Shown piece by piece: positions 1,557 through 36,835 of a DNA stretch of 37,940 nucleotides. Within the stretch, counting starts at the first letter, position 1. Each line of letters begins with the position of its first letter. The notes beneath the pieces were generated by a model. It did no database searches, had not been told where the DNA came from, and saw only the letters and a list, made by a program, of their open reading frames with translations. This stretch comes from Octopus bimaculoides. Lineage: Eukaryota. A program made the translations under genes and the position numbers. Location of the stretch: assembly GCF_001194135.2 (NCBI RefSeq), contig NC_068982.1, positions 171,247,743 to 171,285,682 of the forward strand, read 5' to 3'.

Positions 1557-2006
1557 TCCTCATACGAGTAACGTTCGTACCTTAATTAACACACACCGAA
1601 ATTTAAAGCAAAATCTCATATACAAACATGCGTACTATTCGTAAGACAACTGATTTATAGATAAAGATTTAACTTCTATATTATTGCTGAATTTTATTTA
1701 GAAATCAGAACTGAATGAGGCAACTAATTTTATTGTGACTTGACTGGTTCAGAGAACAGGCATATTAAAGATTTGGTAGAATTGTTTGGCGGGTTTAATT
1801 TTATATTTTATGCATTAGGGAAGTGTGGAGGTTTTTGATGTGATCTGACTTCAGTTTAAATACTGTTGAGAACGTTGTGCAAATTATTACAGCGGAGCAA
1901 ATCCACTAAATCAACTTCGAACCAACACTACGATTGAACAAGTTTGCGTGATGTATGCAATAACTTATATGCATAAGACTGGAAAAGCCAGGATGTTTTC
2001 ATCAAT

Positions 2007-2303
2007 CTGTTCATTGGTTTCTGGATCATAAAAGTATATCCAGCTTTCGTCACAGGTCAGCAGAGACTCAAGTACCCTTGGTTTGGAGGTAATGAATTCA
2101 ACGATTTCTTTTCCGACAGCAACGCGTCTTTCCTTCTGTTCGGCAATGAGTACCCTGACAACTCACTTTGCACAAATTTTGTGCATGTTTAAATCGTTAT
2201 GAAAAATTCTGTGTGCACCAACTCAAAACATTATGCTAGTTATTTTTATAGACACATGACAGTCTTTATTTATAAAATTCTGTTTTTTTTTTTTTTCATC
2301 CAT
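2007..2303 (-). pseudogene. Mariner transposase fragment, internally deleted, with stop codons
   Basis: Minus strand reads MDEK..TEF, then VGAHRIFHNDLNMHKICAK*VVRVLIAEQKERRVAVGKEIVEFITSKPRVLESLLTCDESWIYFYDPETNEQ. This carries a WVPRxL-like motif (W to stop) and the first catalytic motif TCDESWIYFYDPE. No TIRs were located. Confidence 0.88.
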
Positions 2304-2497
2304 CTCTGATATAAACAGCTAGGCGCAACATGATATCGTAAGAAAATATTTTATCCCCGCTAATTGTGAGTGAGGGTCCCGAAGCACTTATATTACAAGA
2401 AATATAGACATTAGCATTTCGCTAGATCAGACATAAATTTATATAGTAAATATATATACTGATAGATCGATTTAGCCAAACCGGCTTGCGATTGGCT

Positions 2498-2552
2498 AGT
2501 CACTGCTGATGAGCCTACGACTGATAGGCGAAACTAGTCTAGTCCAGTGATT
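2498..2552 (+). ncRNA. Type I hammerhead ribozyme with short, near-palindromic stem III (Penelope-like/retrozyme style)
   Basis: Stem I AGTCACTG (2498-2505) pairs with CAGTGATT (2545-2552), one G-U. Core CTGATGA at 2506-2512. Stem II GCCTA (2513-2517)/TAGGC (2525-2529) with loop CGACTGA. GAAA at 2530-2533. Stem III ACTA-GTC-TAGT (2533-2543). Cleavage triplet GTC, predicted cut after C2544. All canonical core nucleotides are present. Confidence 0.93.
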
Positions 2553-2745
2553 CTGTAGTCACTCATGGAGCGATTATCTCCCCTGTCAGTCTATATATAT
2601 TGCGCGTTTCCAACTGCATTAATAGTTTCTAACTCTTATCTCTTGCAATATAGCTGCTTCGTCACCCTCTATCACAATTAATGATAAAAATTTTCATTTA
2701 TGGTATTATACTCCACCTAACTGTTTATATTTATTGTGTGTGTGT

Positions 2746-2786
<41 letters not shown>

Positions 2787-3126
2787 GCCTTATGCTTAAA
2801 AGCGATGCATGATACGATTAATTTTCGACTCGAGTTAAATATATCAAGCTACTCTTAAATTCTTGTTTGAGTACACTCGTAAGTGATGTCAGGACAGGCT
2901 AGTTTGTATTAGCATCAATTTGTAATAGTGAAGTCAGAACAAATAGTGCTATTTTGATAGCATTTAATATGTGCATTTCAAGAAATATATCCCTTATAGA
3001 AGACCTTCCTCGGTTAATAGACTTTAAAAGATGCAAAATTGAAGTGTATTAACTAAGAAAAGACTTGCATGACGGATGTTTTTACCTATTATAAATTACG
3101 CAGATCTGAAATGATCAAAGTATATA

Positions 3127-3355
3127 TTGGGTTGTCTGGAAAGTTCGTGCCGATTTATAGAAGCTTACCTTTCGATTTATTTGCCATGAAACCACCTCAA
3201 TTCTGGGAAGAGAGTATTTTCAAGTTAAAGGAAAGATGGAGACCCATGGTGCAACAAAATGGTTCATATTTGGTTGATTAAAAATGTAATGGCAAGTATC
3301 TATTGACTCTTTTTCTTTCCTTTAAAAGTCGGCACGTACTTTCCGGACAACTCAA
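3127..3355 (+). mobile_element. 229-bp non-autonomous mariner derivative (MITE-like)
   Basis: 27-bp TIRs TTGGGTTGTCTGGAAAGTTCGTGCCGA (3127-3153) and the reverse complement of 3329-3355, 24/27 identical. TA on both sides (3125-3126, 3356-3357). Interior keeps only the transposase C-terminus KPPQFWEESIFKLKERWRPMVQQNGSYLVD*. Confidence 0.92.
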
Positions 3356-3363
3356 TAGTGTGT

Positions 3364-4334: not shown

Positions 4335-4626
4335 GGAAGGAGGAGGAGGAGGCGGAGGGGGAGGAGGCGGAGGAGGAGGAGGCGGAGGAGGANNNNNNNN
4401 NNNNNNNNNNNNNNNNNNNNNNNNNNNNNNNNNNNNNNNNNNNNNNNNNNNNNNNNNNNNNNNNNNNNNNNNNNNNNNNNNNNNNNNNNNNNNNNNNNNN
4501 NNNNNNNNNNNNNNNNNNNNNNNNNNNAGAAGAAGAAGAAGAAGAAGAAGAAGAAGAAGAAGAAGAAGAAGAAGACGACGACGACGACGACGACGTCGAC
4601 GATGATGATGATGATGATGATGATGA
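4335..4626. repeat. Compound trinucleotide repeat (GGA)n-gap-(AGA)n(GAC)n(GAT)n
   Basis: Direct reading; N gap 4393-4527 lies inside. Confidence 0.93.
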
Positions 4627-6123: not shown

Positions 6124-6580
6124 TTGGTGTTGTTTTCGCTGTTGTTGTTGTTTACTTTTAATCTGCATGTTTGTAGCAATCACTTGCCGAATCCTACCCA
6201 AAGCCCTAGGGCAAATGAAGTGTAAGGGGTGCTGCAGCATGACTAAAAGCTTCGGGACGGGGAGTGGCAGGGACGATAGCGAAATATCTCCATTTAGTAC
6301 AACACAGACGTTTATATTAAAAGGGTTTTTTTCTTAGGATATGGGCTGTACTTGTGAGCACAATCTTTTGGATTTCTCTGAGGCATGATTCTCCTGGGAT
6401 CTTGTCTAGATGTTTTTGATATCCCTTTCTTATCATACCTAGGAAGCTTACAATAACAGGAACAGTTCTAGCTTTAAGATGCCATATATTTTGTATTTCA
6501 ATATCCAGATCCTTATATTTACTTAATTTATTAAATTCCTTTACAGTTATATATTTATTTGTTGGAACACTTATATCTAT
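6123..6580 (-). mobile_element. 5'-truncated RLE-type non-LTR retrotransposon (R4/Dong-like), copy A
   Basis: IDISVPTNKYITVKEFNKLSKYKDLDIEIQNIWHLKARTVPVIVSFLGMIRKGYQKHLDKIPGESCLREIQKIVLTSTAHILRK matches the PD-(D/E)xK restriction-like endonuclease C-terminus of R4/Dong-type elements. It is followed by a 3' UTR ending at (TAA)n 6043-6122. Confidence 0.88.
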
Positions 6581-6596
6581 TATTATTATTATTATT

Positions 6597-6936
6597 TTAT
6601 GTTTGACTTTTGTTTTGCATTTGTACAAGTTGGATCCAAGTCTCACCCAGAGACCTCAAGAGACAACAAGTTAGAAGTTCATGTAGGTGTTATGCCTAGG
6701 GTACCATATATTTGGATTTGTACAGTTTTGTCCAAGTGAATGTTTAAGAAACCATAAGAAAATTATGTGTTTGCTTTAAAATTTGAGATCACATAGGCAG
6801 TATTTTACGTAGGATATGGGCAGTTCCCATGAGCACTATCTTTTGAACTTCAGCCATTTTGGGGTTTCCTGGAATCTGAGCTAGGTAGTAATCAGCCCGT
6901 TTCGCTGTCATTCCCAGGGCACCTATGACAATAGGT
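6597..6936 (-). mobile_element. RLE-type non-LTR retrotransposon (R4/Dong-like), copy B, 3' end; continues into the assembly gap
   Basis: Minus strand 6935-6789 reads PIVIGALGMTAKRADYYLAQIPGNPKMAEVQKIVLMGTAHILRKILPM*. The 3' UTR ends ...GGTCTCTGGGTGAGACTTGGATCCAACTTGTACAAATGCAAAACAAAAGTCAAACAT, followed by AAT repeats. Confidence 0.88.
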
Positions 6937-7680
6937 NNNNNNNNNNNNNNNNNNNNNNNNNNNNNNNNNNNNNNNNNNNNNNNNNNNNNNNNNNNNNNNN
7001 NNNNNNNNNNNNNNNNNNNNNNNNNNNNNNNNNNNNNNNNNNNNNNNNNNNNNNNNNNNNNNNNNNNNNNNNNNNNNNNNNNNNNNNNNNNNNNNNNNNN
7101 NNNNNNNNNNNNNNNNNNNNNNNNNNNNNNNNNNNNNNNNNNNNNNNNNNNNNNNNNNNNNNNNNNNNNNNNNNNNNNNNNNNNNNNNNNNNNNNNNNNN
7201 NNNNNNNNNNNNNNNNNNNNNNNNNNNNNNNNNNNNNNNNNNNNNNNNNNNNNNNNNNNNNNNNNNNNNNNNNNNNNNNNNNNNNNNNNNNNNNNNNNNN
7301 NNNNNNNNNNNNNNNNNNNNNNNNNNNNNNNNNNNNNNNNNNNNNNNNNNNNNNNNNNNNNNNNNNNNNNNNNNNNNNNNNNNNNNNNNNNNNNNNNNNN
7401 NNNNNNNNNNNNNNNNNNNNNNNNNNNNNNNNNNNNNNNNNNNNNNNNNNNNNNNNNNNNNNNNNNNNNNNNNNNNNNNNNNNNNNNNNNNNNNNNNNNN
7501 NNNNNNNNNNNNNNNNNNNNNNNNNNNNNNNNNNNNNNNNNNNNNNNNNNNNNNNNNNNNNNNNNNNNNNNNNNNNNNNNNNNNNNNNNNNNNNNNNNNN
7601 NNNNNNNNNNNNNNNNNNNNNNNNNNNNNNNNNNNNNNNNNNNNNNNNNNNNNNNNNNNNNNNNNNNNNNNNNNNNNNNN
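6937..7680. other. Assembly gap (N run)
   Basis: Other gaps: 4393-4527, 19699-19955, 20723-20732, 26365-26611, 35002-35463, 36404-36835. Most abut microsatellites, as expected for a short-read assembly. Confidence 1.
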
Positions 7681-18690: not shown

Positions 18691-19955
18691 TGAACTTCTG
18701 CGTACTTTACTCGCTATTTTTTTTGTTGAATCACATCGTACCAGCTTTTAAAGAAATTCAACATTGAATAAAGTGACAATTGGTTCCATACGCACATAAC
18801 AAAAATGGCTGAAATATCTATGAGATTTAGGACTAAAGATCATTCGTAGCAACACCAATAATTGCCATCTTAGATGGAAAACAGCAACAACAAAAACATA
18901 AGCGTTATGAATCACCAGCATCATAAACAATACCACCATAATCACTACTATTATAATGTGACAACAAGGGAGAGTCTGGATTTGGGTGTCTTAATCTGAG
19001 TTTCCTTTGTTGCAAGGGGTCAACCTAGGCCTCCTATTTGAGGGTTATTCTACCCTTCCTACAACCAGTCTCGGAGACTGAAAAAATATAGTCACGCGTG
19101 TTATACATTCATCTTATTCTCGACTAAACGGTTAAACATATGATAGGTAAAATAACACTCGACTAATACAGATTAGAGACAAAGTATCTTAACAAAAATA
19201 ACATAGAGTTACCACTACTTACACGATAAACATAAGAGCAACAGAAAAGCAGCCACACTACGAAAACATAGACACCATCCATCTCTATTACTACCAGAAA
19301 TTTCTCCACCACCACCTACAACACAAACTTCAATACCACCAAACACAAACACCAATACCACCACCGACATCACCACTTCGAACATAACAGCGGCACCAAT
19401 CATATCAAGATACACCAATCATATCAAGATATCAGCTATTTCAATCTACATCAGTCACCACAACAATATATAGGAAACCACCAACTAACAACAATAGTAA
19501 TCACTGCGATAATAATAAAAGCAAAAACAACGAAAACATCAATAACGACAATTATAGCATCATTGCAAGGTGAAGAGAAAATGAAAAGGTGTGGAATCTG
19601 GTGAAGGTGGAATGACGTTTGGGATGGGGGAGAGAGAGGGAGGGAGGGAAAGAGAGACGGGGTAACTTTATAATGCAAACCCTAACAACATTATATATNN
19701 NNNNNNNNNNNNNNNNNNNNNNNNNNNNNNNNNNNNNNNNNNNNNNNNNNNNNNNNNNNNNNNNNNNNNNNNNNNNNNNNNNNNNNNNNNNNNNNNNNNN
19801 NNNNNNNNNNNNNNNNNNNNNNNNNNNNNNNNNNNNNNNNNNNNNNNNNNNNNNNNNNNNNNNNNNNNNNNNNNNNNNNNNNNNNNNNNNNNNNNNNNNN
19901 NNNNNNNNNNNNNNNNNNNNNNNNNNNNNNNNNNNNNNNNNNNNNNNNNNNNNNN

Positions 19956-23730: not shown

Positions 23731-24770
23731 CTGATACTTGTTATATTTGTTGTTTTATCACGTACAAACCCTGATCAAGCGCGTTCCGACTGTGACAACA
23801 CAATATTTTCGTATATTCACGACTACATCGCCCTATTTTTTAGAACGGCTGGAGGATTTCATTGTAAGTTAATTGTTACTTATTTCAGCTGGAGTGTTCG
23901 TACGGCCTGACTTGTAATGATAAATAACCTTGCCTGTCATATGGGAGGACGCGGTTAGATCCTCCGCCAAGGAGACTACTAAACAATAACGACGGAATGA
24001 GAGAACAGTAGCATTGTTCTTATAGTGATCTGATAATGTACTCATAATTACATTGTGATCGTAATAGGAATAGTTATATTGCGCTTAATGTGCTAAAGTA
24101 GTGACACAGCATGTTGAAATGGTGATCGTTGTCCAAGACAATGATAATAATGGGTGTGGAAAAAGCTTTAATCAAGTCATTTATGTGATGCAATTTAAGA
24201 AGACATAAATCCATTTAAGAACATAAAAACCATTTCCTTTTCGTTCATTTTTTGAAGTGCTAAAACATTCACCTCTCTGATACAATTCTTCTAAGTTGCT
24301 AGTAAGCACTTATTAGCGAGAATTTATAAATATCAGGATGTTTCCTATTTCATTTTCCCTTCCTTTTTCTTTTTAACTTACGAATCTATGGATTTACTAC
24401 GTAACTGCAATCTAATCTTTTGACAGGGGCTAATACCTCCATTTTTCTCTTTTTATCTGTTATAAATTTATATATTTAAATATTTCGTTTTTGTACTTGA
24501 TTTGCGAGAGTTTTGATGTGAACTCGTATGCAGAAAATTATTTTATGTATCTCGGGAGGGTCATTTTACCAACGATAAACACACGCACGGGCTCTATTCA
24601 ACTTTATTATTCGTTAATTGCTTACAAGAAAATATTTCAATATTGCTATTCATCCTGTATCATGCTTCCAACAAAATAGACGTCCTATAGCACTATTTAG
24701 TAACTGTATTTTAAAACATACACTGATGGCGAAATTTGCATTGCTATGCCATATGTTTACTTTTTATATA

Positions 24771-26157
24771 TCAGGTCATCACATAAGTTCTGTCCGATTT
24801 TACCTTTTTTAAAATTGAATGAAATTTAATAGTATTGTCTAATGGAATTAAAAATTATTTTCATGCATTTCTGTACATTTAAAGGAATTGAATATTCTTT
24901 TATAGAATAATAGAATTAAAATTTCTTTGATTATAGCCCTTTCTAACATGGAAGTATCCAAAGAAAATTTGAGGCACATGATGCTTTATGAGTACAAGAA
25001 AGGAAACTCTGCAGCTGAAGTGACTCGAAACATATACTCAGTTTATGGGAAAGAATGCAGAAGATGGCTTGCAAAATTCAGAGTTGGAGATTTCAGCCTT
25101 GAATTGTTCTTAATTGCGATAGTGGCGGCGATGTTGAAGAAGATTACTCTCACCATCGGTTTCATAGTAATGATAACTCTAATAGAGGTGGTGGTGGTGG
25201 TGGATGAAGAGGAAGTAGTGGTGCTGGTGGTGATGGTAAAAGAGGACGTCCAGTTGAGTTTGATGATAAGCTCCTTGAGGCATTACTTGAAGAAAATCCT
25301 GCATTATCAGTTGAAGAATTGGCAATAAAGCTTAGTTCAAACCATACAACTGTTCATCGTCATCTTCAACAACTTGGGAAGGTTCCTAAACTTGAAAAAT
25401 GGGTGCCTCATGAATTGTCCGAAAGTAACCGCAAATCCCGAGTTGATGTCTGCTCTTCTCTCCATTCTCGCAAACTCATTTCACCCTTTTTGGATAGACT
25501 TGTGACTGATGACGAAAAGTGGATTTCTATCGAAATGTTAAACGTCGTAAACAGTGGCTTGGTAATAGGGAAAAAAACTCAAACACAAACGAGAAGGGAA
25601 CTTCATGGAGAAAAGGTCCTTCTCTTTATCTCGTGGGATTACAAAGGAGCAATTCACTCTGAATTGTTACCACCTAATGCAATAATCAATGCTCAAGTCT
25701 ACTGTAAGCAATTAGAGCGTTTGAACCAAGCTTTGAAGAAAAAAAGACCTGTTTTATTGAATCGAAAAGGAGTGATGTTTCATCGGTTCAATGTGTGACC
25801 CCCACACTGCAAAGATCACATTACAGAAGATCGAAGAGCTTGATTGGGAAAAAAATCCTCATCCACCTTATTCTCCCGACCTTGCTCTTTCAGACTACCA
25901 TTTGTTTGGTAGTTCACAGAATCATTTGGAAGACATAACTTTCGCAAGCCAGGAGGAGGTCGAAACTGACATTTCAGAGTCCTTCGCTTTGAAACCAAAA
26001 GAGTTTTCCATTGATGAGATTAAAAAGCTTGAAAATAGATGGCAGGAAGTCCGATAATCAGGGAAAGTACATTGATGATTAAATTTCAACTAAATATAAC
26101 ATTTGATCACTTGTTTTCTTTATTCAAATTTCGGACAGAACTTATGGGATGACATCA
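24771..26157 (+). mobile_element. Full-length decayed mariner (DD34D) transposon, 1387 bp
   Basis: 27-bp TIRs TCAGGTCATCACATAAGTTCTGTCCGA (24771-24797) and the reverse complement of 26131-26157, 24/27 identical. TA flanks at 24769-24770 and 26158-26159. Contains a transposase pseudogene. Confidence 0.96.
24948..26082 (+). pseudogene. Mariner transposase pseudogene (frameshifts, stop, insertion)
   Basis: MEVSKENLRHMMLYEYKKGNSAAEVTRNI..RRWLAKFRVGDFSLE, RGRPVEFDD, KWVPHEL, LVTDDEKW (from GDEKW), decayed HDNARPH (FHRFNV*), PHPPYSPDLALSDYHLF. Spread over the supplied ORFs 24927-25328, 25319-25798 and 25791-26057. Confidence 0.95.
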
Positions 26158-27206
26158 TAGTTTATTGTCACTGCTAATCTTTCTTATTGTTATTGGTGTT
26201 GTTTAACACATTGTTAGCTTCTATCTTGTTAAACATATGACCAATACATAAGAAATATTCATCCACAAAATATAACCTCGACTTTATTTTTCGAATGTCC
26301 CCTACTTCATTTTTATTTATATATTTATATATTTATTTATTTATTTGTCTATTTATTCTGTTTANNNNNNNNNNNNNNNNNNNNNNNNNNNNNNNNNNNN
26401 NNNNNNNNNNNNNNNNNNNNNNNNNNNNNNNNNNNNNNNNNNNNNNNNNNNNNNNNNNNNNNNNNNNNNNNNNNNNNNNNNNNNNNNNNNNNNNNNNNNN
26501 NNNNNNNNNNNNNNNNNNNNNNNNNNNNNNNNNNNNNNNNNNNNNNNNNNNNNNNNNNNNNNNNNNNNNNNNNNNNNNNNNNNNNNNNNNNNNNNNNNNN
26601 NNNNNNNNNNNTGGTGGTGGTAGTGGTGGTGGTGGTGGTGGTAGTGGTGGTGGTTGTGGATGGTGGTGGTGGTGGTGGTGATGGAGAGTGAAGCTTGATA
26701 CGCTGAAAAATGGATTTCTGGTGCTTCTTGGCTCTGAAGAAAGAATTGCTATATGTGTGTACTTGTGTATGTGGTGGTGGTGGGGAAGTTGTATGGATGT
26801 TTGTAGATGCGTGCTTGCGTGTGCGCTCTGTCTGCGTGTATGCTTGTGTGCGTGTGAGTATATATCTGTGTTATGTATGTGTGTACATGTGTGTTCTTCT
26901 GTGCCCGTGTATGTATGCGTGCACGAGCACAGAGAACCAATTCTTAAGAATTCAGTGAGCATAATACATTCGTTTAATCCCGCGAGGCACAATCTGATAT
27001 CTCTATTATCAGAATTCCTTAATGAAAAATGTCAATTCATCTATTTCGAACACCTGTTGAGCAACTACTTTAAAGAAAAACAGATACACCGAGAAGTCAC
27101 TGACGTCAAGGCTAAACATGCAACTTTGCAGCTTTGGTGCACTACTATAAAGCATGTGCAGATGAGCATCAATCACCCATTTCCTTTCTCTTCTATCTCC
27201 CTCACT

Positions 27207-28046: not shown

Positions 28047-28629
28047 CGAGGGTGAGTCAAAAAGTAATGCCATTTTGTTTAGGACAGGTATAATTACCAA
28101 CACAGGAACATGTATCATTCATCAAAGTGAAGCTGGTCCTCTGTGGATCAAATCCCTACTTCTCAACATAGTCACCGTTTCTCTCAATAGCAATGTTCCA
28201 CCTTCGAATGAGAGCATGTATCCCTGCTCCGTAAAATTATGTTGACTGTTCTTTGAGCCACTTCTTCACTATAGTTTTCACTTCCTCGTCACAGGAATAA
28301 TGTTTGCCGCTCAAACCCTCTTTCATGAGGGCGAAGAGATGATAGTCCAGAGACGATGATAGTCTAGTGACGATGGTAGTCCAGTGACGAAGAAGTGAAA
28401 AGTGTAGTGGAGAAGTAGCTCAAAGAACAGTCAACAGAATTTTACGGAGCAGGGATACATGCTCTCATTCGAAAGTGGAACATTGCTATTGAGAGAAACA
28501 GTGACTCTGTTGAGAAGTAGGGATGTGATCCACAGAGGACCAGCTTCATTTTGATGTACGATACATGTTCCTGTGTGGGTAATTATATCTGTCCCAAAGA
28601 AAATAGCATTGCTTTTTGTCTCACCCTCA
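28047..28629. mobile_element. Foldback element: two inverted mariner 3' ends (246-bp arms, 91-bp spacer)
   Basis: Arms 28047-28292 and 28384-28629 are reverse complements with scattered mismatches. Both encode DEEVK..V.KWLKEQST.FYGAGIHALIR.WNIAIERN.D.VEK*, pointing outward. Termini are CGAGGGTGAGTCAAAAAGTAATGC and its inverse; TA at 28630-28631. Confidence 0.93.
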
Positions 28630-32749: not shown

Positions 32750-32780
<31 letters not shown>

Positions 32781-32784
<4 letters not shown>

Positions 32785-32940
32785 CAGGCTTCTTTCCATT
32801 TCTGTCTACCAAATCCATTCACAAGGCTTTGGTCGACCCGAGGCTATAACAGAAGACACTTGCCCAAGGTGCCATGCAATGGGACTGAACCCCTAACCAT
32901 GTGGTTGGGAAGCAAGATTCCTACTATACAGCCACGGCTA
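32781..32940 (-). mobile_element. tRNA-derived SINE, family 1, 5' half
   Basis: Reverse complement GTGGCTGTATAGTAGGAATCTTGCTTCCCAACCACATGGTTAGGGGTTCAGTCCCATTGCATGGCACCTTGGGCAAGTGTCTTC.. aligns with 34782-34946. Confidence 0.85.
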
Positions 32941-33589
32941 TATATATATAGATAAATCACTTATATTTTGGTGTAAATATAACAACTGCTCAACATTTGG
33001 ATTTGACTTGCTTAGTGCAGTGAATACGATAACGTGAAGATAGCCGCGCACGGCCATCTTCAAATAAAACATACCAGCGTTTCGTCACTAAATCAATGAG
33101 CGATGAGTAAGATAATGTAGAGGCATAGAAATGATGACTGAATCCATAATGCTTACAGGAATTGTTTTGGCATCAAATTGTCAATGGAAGAAGTATAAAT
33201 GTAATATGTTCTTAAAAGTTACTGGAAATCAGTTATACAAAATTATTAGTAACAGAAAGAATTATAAATATTATTCTTTCTTTGTTCATGAATATTTTTT
33301 GTTAACTAAATACTTGTTGACATATATGATCTTGATCTTATCGCTTTCAGATAGTCATTTTCAACTATGGCCGAATGTCACACCATAGAAATAATTGGAT
33401 TGCAGTGATTTTTTTCCCTTCTCACATCCACTTATAATTTATGGTGTCGTGTTGCGTGGCTGTGTAAACAAGAAGGTCAACGTAACAAACAGTGAATCAG
33501 AAAATATATTTGCCATAATTGTCGTGATTTCACGTCATCTTTGATATTAAGAGGAAGAAGTGTAATATTATGTTGAAAGCTATTTCTGT

Positions 33590-33920: not shown

Positions 33921-34781
33921 AGCTCACAAAGAGTATTTTGTAATGGTAGGTCATGCGAGATTATCATGAGAGAAAAGGAAATTCGATTCCTCACCTAAGA
34001 GGCTATTAAACAGCAAAGATTGTGCTAGAGAACGGTAACATTTCTATTAGAGATCTGATAGTTAGTGGTAAAATCCAGCAATATTATTGATGTTTTTGTA
34101 GTGTGTGAGCATCAAATTGTCTCTCGTATGTAATGGTTCGGTAATGCAGAAGTGTAGATACATATAACGTAGATCTGTTCAAAAACACTGAATCCGTGGA
34201 GTAGTTACCAATATTCCAATGTCATAGTCTGCTAAAATATTATCATGTCATTATTTTATTACTAAGATCTCATTGTTTCTTTTCTCTTAGTTTATCCTTC
34301 TCAATGCAAAGTCTGGAGATGGGAATTTAGCCAGGTTAATGTCACTGTATATAAAACTGAAGCTTTGGTCTCAACGCATGATAAACCTCTGACATTTTCT
34401 TCAACAATGACATGAGAATCTAGTGTTATTAAACTTCTGTCATTGTGTGTAATACATGTGTAAACAAAGCAAGGGGTTACAAAAAGAAAGGTTTTTGGTG
34501 TCTAGCACGACTTTGATCTTCTTTTCATATTATCAATCCTTACCACGTATTCTGTCATACCGCAATAACTTGAAACGTTTATGGTACTGGTTAACCCAGA
34601 CGTAATGAAGTGAGAAGATAATAAATTTTCCTAATTTAACATGAAGCAGGAATCCAAAATTGCTTTCAAAATATTTTCTCTACTGTATTATGAGGAAGTG
34701 TATTAAATGCATTAAACGCGATGCAACAATATATTAAAACTATTAGAATAAGTCCTCCCATCTCAATAATATATATATATA

Positions 34782-34943
34782 GGTGCAGGAGTAGCTGTGT
34801 AGTAAGAGGCTTGCTTCCCAACCACATTGTTCCAGGTTCAGTCCCACTGCGTGGCACCTGGGACAAATGTCCTCTACTATATCCTCGGGCTGACCAAAGC
34901 TTTGTGAGTGGATTTGGTAGGTGGAAACTGAGAGTAGTCCGTC

Positions 34944-34946
<3 letters not shown>
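34782..34946 (+). mobile_element. tRNA-derived SINE, family 1, 5' half (CORE-like segment), followed by (TG)n and a gap
   Basis: A-box-like TAGCTGTGTAGTAAG, B-box-like GGTTCAGTCCC, and CORE-like GGCACCTGGGACAAATGTCCTCT. Closely matches the reverse complement of 32781-32940. Confidence 0.82.
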
Positions 34947-35001
<55 letters not shown>

Positions 35002-35489
35002 NNNNNNNNNNNNNNNNNNNNNNNNNNNNNNNNNNNNNNNNNNNNNNNNNNNNNNNNNNNNNNNNNNNNNNNNNNNNNNNNNNNNNNNNNNNNNNNNNNN
35101 NNNNNNNNNNNNNNNNNNNNNNNNNNNNNNNNNNNNNNNNNNNNNNNNNNNNNNNNNNNNNNNNNNNNNNNNNNNNNNNNNNNNNNNNNNNNNNNNNNNN
35201 NNNNNNNNNNNNNNNNNNNNNNNNNNNNNNNNNNNNNNNNNNNNNNNNNNNNNNNNNNNNNNNNNNNNNNNNNNNNNNNNNNNNNNNNNNNNNNNNNNNN
35301 NNNNNNNNNNNNNNNNNNNNNNNNNNNNNNNNNNNNNNNNNNNNNNNNNNNNNNNNNNNNNNNNNNNNNNNNNNNNNNNNNNNNNNNNNNNNNNNNNNNN
35401 NNNNNNNNNNNNNNNNNNNNNNNNNNNNNNNNNNNNNNNNNNNNNNNNNNNNNNNNNNNNNNNAAAACAAATAATAAATGAGTATACGC

Positions 35490-36400: not shown

Positions 36401-36835
36401 TATNNNNNNNNNNNNNNNNNNNNNNNNNNNNNNNNNNNNNNNNNNNNNNNNNNNNNNNNNNNNNNNNNNNNNNNNNNNNNNNNNNNNNNNNNNNNNNNNN
36501 NNNNNNNNNNNNNNNNNNNNNNNNNNNNNNNNNNNNNNNNNNNNNNNNNNNNNNNNNNNNNNNNNNNNNNNNNNNNNNNNNNNNNNNNNNNNNNNNNNNN
36601 NNNNNNNNNNNNNNNNNNNNNNNNNNNNNNNNNNNNNNNNNNNNNNNNNNNNNNNNNNNNNNNNNNNNNNNNNNNNNNNNNNNNNNNNNNNNNNNNNNNN
36701 NNNNNNNNNNNNNNNNNNNNNNNNNNNNNNNNNNNNNNNNNNNNNNNNNNNNNNNNNNNNNNNNNNNNNNNNNNNNNNNNNNNNNNNNNNNNNNNNNNNN
36801 NNNNNNNNNNNNNNNNNNNNNNNNNNNNNNNNNNN

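What the first reader, a model, noticed from the sequence alone, without database searches (positions are those of the whole stretch)
2519..2591. Hammerhead followed by its own imperfect antisense copy: candidate ribozyme off-switch
Seen in sequence: 2557-2591 is an imperfect reverse complement of the ribozyme's 3' two-thirds. GACUGAUAGG (2519-2528) pairs with CCUGUCAGUC (2582-2591), 10 bp with one G-U. UAGUC (2535-2539) pairs with GAUUA (2572-2576). UCC (2543-2545, includes the cleavage-site C) pairs with GGA (2567-2569). AGUGAUU (2546-2552) pairs with AGUCACU (2557-2563) around a CUGU loop. These helices nest into one long hairpin that would break stems I, II and III. Three differences are G-U wobbles on the ribozyme strand (A-C on the other strand), a weak hint of selection on this RNA. 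Inference: the ribozyme is complete at 2552 and could cleave before the antisense arm is made, giving a kinetic switch like the alternative rod folds of viroid and retrozyme hammerheads. Alternatively only GACUGA/UCAGUC pairs, forming an activating loop II pseudoknot. I do not know of this arrangement being described for this family, but cannot check.
Basis: partly seen in the sequence, partly recalled or inferred. Interest (0 to 1): 0.85.

Follow-up and report, generated by a model that had tools for sequence, protein, structure and literature searches.

The report
Self-masked hammerhead in an old foldback repeat
A textbook-looking self-cutting RNA motif sits at the tip of a 420-base hairpin-forming repeat in an octopus-like genome. 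The sequence just after it can pair with it and hide it, as in viroids and plant retrozymes, but this is one old, decayed copy with no relatives found, so the masking cannot be shown to be functional.

Summary
Bases 2519-2552 pair with 2557-2591 in one nested 27-bp hairpin with three G-U pairs. That exceeds chance: 1 of 1000 tail shuffles and 0 of 1000 genomic tails match it.

The hammerhead at 2492-2552 has a fully canonical type I core but scores below Rfam's gathering threshold (27.8 against 52 bits).

The context changes the reading:
- **Foldback:** ribozyme and arm are the apex of a roughly 420-nt imperfect foldback (2309-2730, arms 78% complementary, z = -8.2).
- **Two partners:** the 3' arm can also pair with the 5' flank (2450-2466, -15.5 kcal/mol) instead of loop II and stem II (-14.9 kcal/mol).
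- **Ribozyme fold never favoured:** this holds at every transcript length tested. A 5' hairpin (2494-2515) can form first. Helix III is the quasi-palindromic type that works in dimers.
- **No strand bias:** G-U against A-C mismatches in the arms are 11 to 12, and both strands fold equally well.
- **Old copy:** it abuts a broken mariner pseudogene and a T15 run.

No related copy was found in any reachable collection, so conservation could not be tested.

Masking of hammerheads by complementary sequence is already described for viroids, plant retrozymes and some mussel retrozymes. Verdict: a new member of a known kind, of modest interest.

The parts
2492..2553 (+). Type I hammerhead ribozyme motif. 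Stem I is 2498-2505 with 2545-2552. CUGAUGA is 2506-2512. Stem II is 2513-2517 with 2525-2529, closed by the loop CGACUGA (2518-2524). GAAA is 2530-2533. Helix III is 2533-2536 with 2540-2543. The predicted cleavage is after C2544.
   Evidence: Sequence. Rfam HH9 27.8 bits, E 7e-5 in 500 nt and 0.0055 in the whole window. Pair list. It is the only hit of my structural scan in the window plus 42 kb of other loci.
2519..2591 (+). It sequesters loop II, the stem II 3' strand, GAAA, helix III, the cleavage site and the stem I 3' strand.
   Evidence: -27.2 kcal/mol. Significance.
2553..2598 (+). The 3' arm, which has two mutually exclusive partners: the ribozyme (blocking register) or the 5' flank (rod register).
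   Evidence: (I4, I8).
2450..2466 (+). The 5' flank partner of the 3' arm (AUAUAUAUACUGAUAGA). It shares the 8-mer ACUGAUAG with loop II and stem II (2520-2527).
   Evidence: D6, I4. Inverted match reached by 1 of 2000 shuffles. Duplex energy -15.5 kcal/mol.
2494..2515 (+). Alternative 5' hairpin that pairs the stem I 5' strand with CUGAUGAG. It can form before the ribozyme's 3' half exists.
   Evidence: -8.6 kcal/mol.
2557..2561 (+). AGUCA. It pairs either with UGGCU 2493-2497 (a distal extension of stem I, leaving CUGU 2553-2556 as a bulge) or with UGAUU 2548-2552 (the blocker).
2309..2408 (.). Left outer arm of the foldback.
   Evidence: I1, I2; z = -8.2.
2634..2730 (.). Right outer arm of the foldback.
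2458..2581 (+). Two direct-repeat units of about 62 nt (2458-2519 and 2520-2581). Their identity is concentrated in ACTGATAG, GATT and TAGTCACT.
   Evidence: 4 of 5000 shuffles and 0 of 804 genomic windows reach the score. (D4, D6).
2283..2297 (.). T15 run at the breakpoint. On the minus strand it reads as a poly(A) tail.
1998..2282 (-). Mariner-like transposase pseudogene whose homology stops exactly at 2282.
   Evidence: tblastn with P0025, E 2e-31, ending at 2282.
2735..2783 (.). (TG)24 microsatellite directly after the right arm.
2847..2857 (.). Weak candidate for a target-site duplication (TTAAATTCTTG, against ATAAAATTCTG at 2272-2282). It is not statistically significant.

Best explanation
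This is a single, old and probably inactive genomic copy of a hammerhead-bearing, rod-forming mobile element. It is of the kind known as retrozyme or Penelope-associated repeats, and it lies in an octopus-like genome.

The type I hammerhead occupies the closed end of a roughly 420-nt imperfect hairpin. The 3' strand that leaves stem I (2553-2598) can pair in two registers:
- **Rod register:** it pairs with the 5' flank (2450-2466 and 2493-2497). This prolongs stem I into the rod and leaves the ribozyme free.
- **Blocking register:** it pairs with the ribozyme's own loop II, stem II, helix III and stem I 3' strand.

Both registers are possible because ACUGAUAG and a UGRYU segment occur twice.

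The logic matches viroids and plant retrozymes. The ribozyme acts in nascent or multimeric (dimeric) RNA and is hidden in the stable monomer fold. Here helix III is of the dimer-dependent type.

Shown here: the anatomy, the non-randomness, the energy ranking and the competition between the two partners. Inferred: that the masking served the active ancestor, and that this copy is now dead.
For: - Canonical core and topology.
- Foldback with z = -8.2 and 78% arm complementarity, with its apex inside the ribozyme.
- The blocking hairpin is non-random and is part of the global minimum-free-energy fold.
- The two competing helices have nearly equal strength, -14.9 and -15.5 kcal/mol.
- The masked fold is favoured by 7.7-16 kcal/mol, with barriers of 17-33 kcal/mol.
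- The homodimer is predicted to fold into a double hammerhead with an extended helix III, -38.3 against 2 x -16.4 kcal/mol.
- Literature: metazoan type I hammerheads have short palindromic helix III and work as dimers (PMC4209133). Retrozyme RNAs are highly self-paired, with GC below 50%; solo monomers are common; and masking by complementary sequence is known in plant retrozymes, viroids and some mussel retrozymes (PMC7229834; bioRxiv 10.64898/2026.07.22.740005).
- The element has 36.5% GC.
- It abuts a breakpoint in a mariner pseudogene, so it arrived by insertion or rearrangement.
Against: - No second copy was found anywhere, so neither family membership nor conservation of the arm is shown.
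- There is only one hammerhead and no tandem repeat.
- The T15 run at the breakpoint suggests that the retroposed RNA was the minus strand. That strand carries no hammerhead.
- There is no excess of G-U over A-C mismatches, and both strands fold equally well. The self-complementarity could therefore be purely a DNA-level feature.
- The Rfam score is below the gathering threshold.
- Stem I (8 bp) and stem II (5 bp) differ from the 6 bp and 4 bp usual for metazoan hammerheads (PMC4209133).
Confidence: 0.4

Rival explanations
1. DNA-level by-product. The region is a palindromic DNA repeat (a MITE, a foldback element or an inverted duplication) that carries a relic hammerhead. A local direct duplication of about 62 nt inside a palindrome automatically gives the 3' arm a second partner. 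No RNA-level selection is involved.
For: - Units 2458-2519 and 2520-2581 are significantly similar.
- G-U against A-C mismatches are 11 to 12, with 16 transversions, as expected for neutral decay.
- Plus and minus strands fold equally well.
- The same window holds other DNA foldbacks and MITEs: 28200-28520 and 3120-3358.
- The terminal inverted repeat ATATAAACAGYTAGG matches 14 of 15 positions.
Against: - Similarity between the two units is 20 of 20 in the three segments that do the pairing, and near random in between. That pattern fits constraint better than uniform decay.
- No target duplication flanks the inverted-repeat ends (sequence).
- A perfect palindrome cannot contain the asymmetric hammerhead core, yet the core is intact.
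Confidence: 0.3
2. The local hairpin is a selected co-transcriptional off-switch: the ribozyme cleaves in the window between synthesis of 2552 and 2591, and is then locked off.
For: - Non-random complementarity.
- A sharp drop in the share of hammerhead fold when the 3' end reaches 2591.
- High barriers between the two states.
- Three G-U and no A-C mismatches within the local hairpin.
Against: - The hammerhead is not favoured at any length.
- The 5' hairpin 2494-2515 forms first.
- Helix III is of the dimer-dependent type (PMC4209133).
- The window is only 39 nt. From my own knowledge of polymerase speeds and hammerhead rates, that is a second or two, enough for at most a minor fraction to cleave.
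- Three against zero is not significant, and the element-wide count is 11 to 12.
Confidence: 0.12
3. Not a ribozyme. A hammerhead-like motif arose by chance at the apex of a palindrome, which supplies stems I and II for free.
For: - The Rfam score is about half the gathering score.
- The hammerhead fold is never the minimum-free-energy fold.
- It is a single copy.
Against: - All invariant positions are present (CUGAUGA, GAAA, A15.1-U16.1, C17, G10.1-C11.1), together with a helix III of the typical metazoan palindromic kind.
- The window-level E-value is 0.0055.
- It is the only structural hit in about 80 kb scanned on both strands.
Confidence: 0.08
4. Activating pseudoknot. Only GACUGA (2519-2524) pairs with UCAGUC (2586-2591) while the hammerhead stays folded, and this replaces the loop-loop tertiary contact.
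For: - A 6-bp duplex of -6.6 kcal/mol is possible.
- The 33-nt linker is long enough (inference).
- Stem I lacks the usual 6-bp geometry for a loop 1 to loop 2 contact (PMC4209133).
Against: - The full 10-bp helix plus the nested helices is far more stable (-14.9 and -27.2 kcal/mol). It consumes stem II.
- The tools here cannot score pseudoknots.
Confidence: 0.03

Closest known systems
Metazoan non-LTR retrozymes (Cervera and de la Pena 2020, PMC7229834)
   Same: Type I hammerhead; low GC (36.5%); highly self-paired RNA with the ribozyme at one end of a rod; size near the 170-400 nt range. Solo monomers are common in genomes (bioRxiv 10.64898/2026.07.22.740005). Some mussel members have the ribozyme masked.
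   Different: There is no tandem repeat and no second hammerhead. The element is about 420 nt. A T15 run on the opposite strand lies at one end. No other copies or circular RNA evidence are available. [quoted passage not shown]
Avsunviroidae and plant LTR retrozymes
   Same: The hammerhead is hidden by a complementary strand in the stable rod and is thought to act only in nascent or multimeric RNA (PMC7229834, PMC4209133). This is the closest match for how the element would work.
   Different: Those carry type III hammerheads. Viroids have ribozymes in both polarities and no DNA stage. Here there is one type I motif on one strand of genomic DNA.
Dimer-dependent hammerheads of newt satellite 2 and Penelope-like element repeats (PMC4209133)
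   Same: Short, quasi-palindromic helix III (ACUAG-U-CUAGU). A double hammerhead is predicted for the dimer.
   Different: No Penelope reverse transcriptase or GIY-YIG reading frame was seen nearby. Helix III has 3-4 bp rather than 1-2. There is no neighbouring second copy to dimerise with in cis.
MITEs and foldback DNA transposons
   Same: A near full-length imperfect palindrome, AT-rich ends, both strands folding equally well, and other such elements in the same window.
   Different: No flanking target duplication is evident. No MITE family with a hammerhead is known to me, and a literature search found none.
Rfam Hammerhead_HH9 (RF02275)
   Same: It is the best-scoring Rfam model and it aligns the core and all three helices.
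   Different: The score is 27.8 bits against a gathering score of 52. HH9 is a conserved intronic amniote ribozyme, and nothing suggests orthology.

Membership tests
Hammerhead ribozyme, type I | Invariant core: CUGANGA, GAAA, A15.1-U16.1, a non-G residue at position 17, and G10.1-C11.1 | tested here: met
Hammerhead ribozyme, type I | Three helices around the core, with helix I open and helices II and III closed by loops | tested here: met
   helix I 8 bp, helix II 5 bp, helix III 3-4 bp.
Hammerhead ribozyme, type I | Reaches the curated Rfam gathering score | tested here: not met
   27.8 bits against 52.
Hammerhead ribozyme, type I | Self-cleavage at the predicted site | not testable with these tools
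   Needs in vitro transcription.
Hammerhead ribozyme, type I | Loop 1 to loop 2 tertiary contact with the usual geometry (helix I 6 bp, helix II 4 bp) | tested here: inconclusive
   Helix I is 8 bp before the CUGU bulge and helix II is 5 bp with a 7-nt loop. The reference geometry is from PMC4209133.
Metazoan non-LTR retrozyme | Tandem repeats of 170-400 bp, each with a type I hammerhead | tested here: not met
   One hammerhead and no tandem unit of that size. It could still be a solo monomer.
Metazoan non-LTR retrozyme | Highly self-paired RNA with GC below 50% | tested here: met
   z = -8.2; GC 0.365.
Metazoan non-LTR retrozyme | Many copies in the genome, expressed as circular RNA | not testable with these tools
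   No eukaryotic genome or transcriptome collection could be searched by DNA. Indirect searches found nothing.
Penelope-like element terminal repeat | Adjacent reverse transcriptase and GIY-YIG reading frame, with a hammerhead in each flanking repeat | tested here: not met
   No such reading frame appears among the window's open frames. Pfam found nothing in ten nearby frames. The scan was not exhaustive.
Viroid-like RNA (Avsunviroidae) | Hammerheads in both polarities | tested here: not met
   No CUGAUGA-like core lies on the minus strand of 2283-2860.
MITE | Terminal inverted repeats flanked directly by a short target duplication | tested here: inconclusive
   Inverted ends 2309-2323 and 2716-2730 match 14 of 15 positions. 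No duplication is visible at their edges.
LINE-mobilised retroposon (SINE-like) | Poly(A) tail and a 7-20 bp target duplication | tested here: inconclusive
   A T15 run sits exactly at the mariner breakpoint. The candidate 11-nt duplication is not significant, with about 0.36 chance matches expected in a 200-nt range. The right flank is not demonstrably mariner.
LINE-mobilised retroposon (SINE-like) | tRNA-like or other polymerase III head | tested here: not met
   ARAGORN finds nothing in 2100-3000.

The most novel reading that the evidence does not exclude
The active ancestor of this copy was a cephalopod hammerhead element with a built-in three-way conformational switch. One 3' strand chooses between the 5' flank (rod-extended, active ribozyme) and the ribozyme's own loop II and stem II (masked). 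The choice is made possible by a duplicated ACUGAUAG box. This would be a viroid-style masking mechanism in an animal genomic element, in a phylum class where hammerheads have not been described in the literature I could search.
Probability: 0.12. Interest if true: 0.6.

Novelty: new member of a known kind. Interest (0 to 1): 0.3.

Why it matters
If the masking arm proved conserved and covarying in other copies, it would give an animal example of the viroid and plant-retrozyme strategy of hiding a hammerhead in the stable fold. PMC7229834 says most metazoan retrozymes lack such self-pairing and must block the ribozyme in some other way. The duplicated-box competition would also be a simple natural design for a ribozyme switch. 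As it stands, this is one decayed copy in transposon debris. It mainly adds a probable cephalopod hammerhead element to the catalogue.

Tried and rejected
- **Rfam at gathering thresholds:** no hit anywhere in the window. At relaxed thresholds everything except HH9 is a microsatellite artefact.
- **Search for relatives by DNA pattern:**
  - IMG/VR gave only unrelated phage hammerheads that share stem I or stem II letters by chance.
  - JGI metagenomes gave five unrelated matches.
  - GTDB genomes gave nothing in two scans.
- **Search for relatives by protein:**
  - A pseudo-protein made of all stop-free frames of the element found nothing at E up to 10.
  - Exact look-ups of two window reading frames were not on record.
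- **Other copies in the data held:** none in the window, in 20 kb each of Octopus bimaculoides and Limulus, or in a 1.3-kb Logan contig (L010).
- **Direct repeat as the explanation of the antisense arm:** not significant by strict local alignment, but significant as a 62-nt unit alignment. I kept it as part of a rival explanation.
- **A hammerhead on the minus strand:** none.
- **A tRNA-like head:** none.
- **Pfam on nearby frames and on the conceptual mariner:** nothing.
- **A long duplication between the two flanks:** none.
- **The 11-nt candidate target duplication:** not significant.
- **Mariner N-terminus on the right flank:** not significant, 0.8 bits. Only the left breakpoint at 2282/2283 is solid. 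I withdrew my earlier idea of a cleanly delimited 564-nt insertion.
- **The 11-mer shared with the 17-nt tandem at 28338-28390:** it lies in mariner-derived sequence, and I judge it a coincidence.

Full report
**What is at the coordinates.**

The plus strand at 2492-2552 reads as a type I hammerhead:
- Stem I: 2498-2505 with 2545-2552 (8 bp, one G-U).
- CUGAUGA: 2506-2512.
- Stem II: GCCUA/UAGGC (2513-2517 with 2525-2529), closed by the loop CGACUGA.
- GAAA: 2530-2533.
- Helix III: 2533-2536 with 2540-2543.
- Cleavage is expected after C2544.

Every invariant core position is canonical. Rfam gives nothing at gathering thresholds. The best relaxed match is HH9 at 27.8 bits against a gathering score of 52. 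Its E-value is 7e-5 in a 500-nt search and 0.0055 for the whole window. A structural scan of my own found this motif and no other in the window and in 42 kb of other eukaryotic loci, on both strands.

The four helices are all present. They nest into a 27-bp hairpin (2519-2591) with three G-U pairs and an energy of -27.2 kcal/mol. This hairpin is the minimum-free-energy fold of 2470-2600.

I kept the ribozyme fixed and replaced the 43-nt tail. Only 1 of 1000 dinucleotide shuffles reached the observed stability, and 0 of 1000 random genomic 43-mers did. The complementarity is therefore not chance. At the plain DNA alignment level it is only marginal (97 of 2000 shuffles).

The ribozyme and its arm are the apex of a much larger imperfect foldback.
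- Arms 2309-2408 and 2634-2730 are complementary, as are 2450-2465 and 2583-2598.
- A global alignment of the left half with the reverse complement of the right half gives 154 of 198 aligned positions (78%), with the centre near 2521, inside stem II.
- The 456-nt stretch 2290-2745 that contains the foldback folds at -142.5 kcal/mol, z = -8.2.

The 3' arm therefore has two partners.
- **Rod register:** CUGUCAGUCUAUAUAU (2583-2598) pairs with AUAUAUAUACUGAUAG (2450-2465), and AGUCA (2557-2561) pairs with UGGCU (2493-2497). This prolongs stem I past a CUGU bulge and leaves the hammerhead free.
- **Blocking register:** the same bases pair with GACUGAUAGG (2519-2528) and UGAUU (2548-2552).

This works because ACUGAUAG occurs twice, at 2458-2465 and 2520-2527 (D6). 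The two competing helices are nearly equal in strength: -15.5 and -14.9 kcal/mol.

**Energetics.**

- Folds that contain the hammerhead are less stable than the masked fold by 11.4 kcal/mol (2470-2600), 7.7 (2440-2610), 9.5 (whole element) and 16.2 (2492-2595).
- The isolated 2492-2555 RNA also prefers another fold, -16.4 against -12.7 kcal/mol.
- That other fold includes a 5' hairpin (2494-2515, -8.6 kcal/mol). It pairs the stem I 5' strand with CUGAUGAG and can form before the 3' half of the ribozyme is made.
- In the nearest-neighbour ensemble, the share of hammerhead fold is 1e-3 to 1e-5 for transcripts ending between 2550 and 2585. It falls to 1e-7 to 1e-12 once the 3' end reaches 2591.
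- Estimated barriers are about 17 kcal/mol from the active to the masked state and 25-33 kcal/mol back.

These models ignore tertiary contacts, so the absolute numbers are soft. The ranking is clear.

A switch is physically possible. But the active state is never the favoured one, and the order of synthesis favours the inactive 5' hairpin.

From my own knowledge of polymerase speeds and hammerhead rate constants, 39 nt leaves roughly a second or two. That is enough for only a minor fraction to cleave.

**The ribozyme is of the dimer-dependent kind.**

Helix III reads ACUAG-U-CUAGU, a near palindrome. Two copies of 2492-2556 are predicted to fold into a double hammerhead with an extended intermolecular helix III. 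Its energy is -38.3 kcal/mol, against -32.8 for two monomers.

PMC4209133 describes exactly this as the normal design of metazoan type I hammerheads. It notes that the design is thought to allow cleavage in multimeric RNA while sparing monomers. Helix I (8 bp) and helix II (5 bp) differ from the usual 6 and 4 bp given there, so the loop-loop contact is uncertain.

**Is the complementarity selected at the RNA level?**

The evidence does not say so.
- Over the aligned arms there are 11 G-U mismatches, 12 A-C mismatches and 16 transversions.
- The minus strand folds as well as the plus strand: -145.0 against -141.8 kcal/mol for the element, and -24.2 against -27.2 for the local hairpin.

One feature points the other way. 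Units 2458-2519 and 2520-2581 are significantly similar as direct repeats (4 of 5000 shuffles and 0 of 804 genomic windows reach the score). Yet their identity is concentrated in ACTGATAG, GATT and TAGTCACT, exactly the segments that create the two registers. It is near random in between. That pattern fits either a local duplication with constraint on those segments, or selection for two partners. I cannot tell which.

**Genomic setting.**

The window is eukaryotic: 35% GC, dozens of microsatellites and assembly gaps. It shares several non-mariner repeats at 75-86% identity with an Octopus bimaculoides chromosome locus. I therefore take it to be from an octopus or a relative.

A mariner-like transposase pseudogene runs on the minus strand from 1998 and stops exactly at 2282 (tblastn with P0025, E 2e-31; homologues). 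A T15 run follows directly (2283-2297), then the foldback, then (TG)24.

The abrupt break shows that the element arrived by insertion or rearrangement. The T15 run suggests a poly(A) tail on the minus strand. That would mean the retroposed RNA carried the reverse complement of the hammerhead, and the minus strand has no hammerhead core. I cannot explain this.

The right boundary is not established.
- A candidate 11-nt target duplication (2847-2857) is not significant.
- The right flank is not demonstrably mariner.
- No tRNA-like head and no Penelope reading frame were found.

**Search for relatives.**

Nothing related was found:
- Elsewhere in the window.
- In IMG/VR, which gave only unrelated phage hammerheads.
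- In JGI metagenomes.
- In GTDB genomes.
- In a protein-space search with all stop-free frames of the element.
- In 20 kb each of octopus and Limulus, or in the 1.3-kb Logan contig L010.

No tool here searches eukaryotic genomes by DNA.

**Comparison with what is known.**

Functionally the closest match is the masking of hammerheads in viroids and plant LTR retrozymes. [quoted passage not shown]

By anatomy the closest family is the metazoan non-LTR retrozyme: type I hammerhead, low GC, highly self-paired RNA. Solo monomers are common (bioRxiv 10.64898/2026.07.22.740005). Membership fails on tandem organisation. It cannot be tested for copy number or circular RNA.

I found no paper describing hammerheads in cephalopods in the searchable library, and none describing a hammerhead in a MITE.

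**Verdict.**

It is weakened by the context, by the dimer-type ribozyme, by the lack of strand bias and by the existence of close precedents.

The most likely reading is an old solo copy of a hammerhead-bearing rod-forming element, whose self-masking follows a known principle (confidence 0.4). The main rival is a purely DNA-level palindrome with a relic ribozyme (0.3).

Novelty: a new member of a known kind. Interest: 0.3.

Noticed in passing
L001 10529-12444 (-) and L002 3232-5147 (+): Two IMG/VR phage contigs each carry three near-identical hammerheads in intergenic spacers. Each is followed within about 25 nt by a ribosome-binding-like GGAG and an ATG. This looks like ribozyme processing of a polycistronic transcript.
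   Followed up: partly
L011-L056 (46 IMG/VR contigs): Many phage contigs hold hammerheads with the same stem II letters (GCCUA/UAGGC) as the window's ribozyme, but with different stems I and III. They fall into a few recurring sequence families.
   Followed up: partly
L005 152-195, 945-989, 1418-1462: A 2.2-kb metagenome contig (JACCDR010639453.1) has three matches to a generic hammerhead pattern on one strand, 473-793 nt apart. The first has convincing stems. It may be a tandem ribozyme repeat.
   Followed up: no
window 28200-28520: A second foldback. Two inverted copies of a mariner 3' end (roughly 28200-28260 and 28420-28480) flank three 17-nt tandem units, GATGATAGTCCAGTGAC. The units share an 11-mer with the hammerhead cleavage region, which I judge a coincidence.
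   Followed up: partly
window 3120-3358: A mariner-derived MITE of about 240 bp. It has both terminal inverted repeats (TTGGGTTGTCTGGAAAGTTCGTGCCGA...) and retains only the last 35 or so codons of the transposase.
   Followed up: partly
window 24768-26161: A frameshifted mariner pseudogene. It is 94% identical in DNA to a Logan contig from run SRR20902413, 85% to a Limulus polyphemus copy and 78% to an Octopus bimaculoides copy. This suggests a horizontally spread family.
   Followed up: partly
window 32765-32949 (+) and 34766-34985 (-): Copies of a SINE-like repeat also present many times in the Octopus bimaculoides locus L009. Each is flanked by (TA)n or (CA)n microsatellites.
   Followed up: partly
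window 6320-6655 (-): An open frame resembling, from memory, the conserved C-terminal region found after the reverse transcriptase of some invertebrate LINEs (DISVP...KY.DL...VPV..G.LG). Pfam found nothing.
   Followed up: partly
window 4393-4527, 6937-7680, 19699-19955, 26365-26611, 35002-35463, 36404-36835: Runs of N (assembly gaps), mostly next to microsatellites. The window comes from a draft assembly.
   Followed up: no
window 2283-2297: A T15 run lies exactly where the mariner homology breaks. It implies an A-tail on the strand opposite the hammerhead. This remains unexplained.
   Followed up: partly
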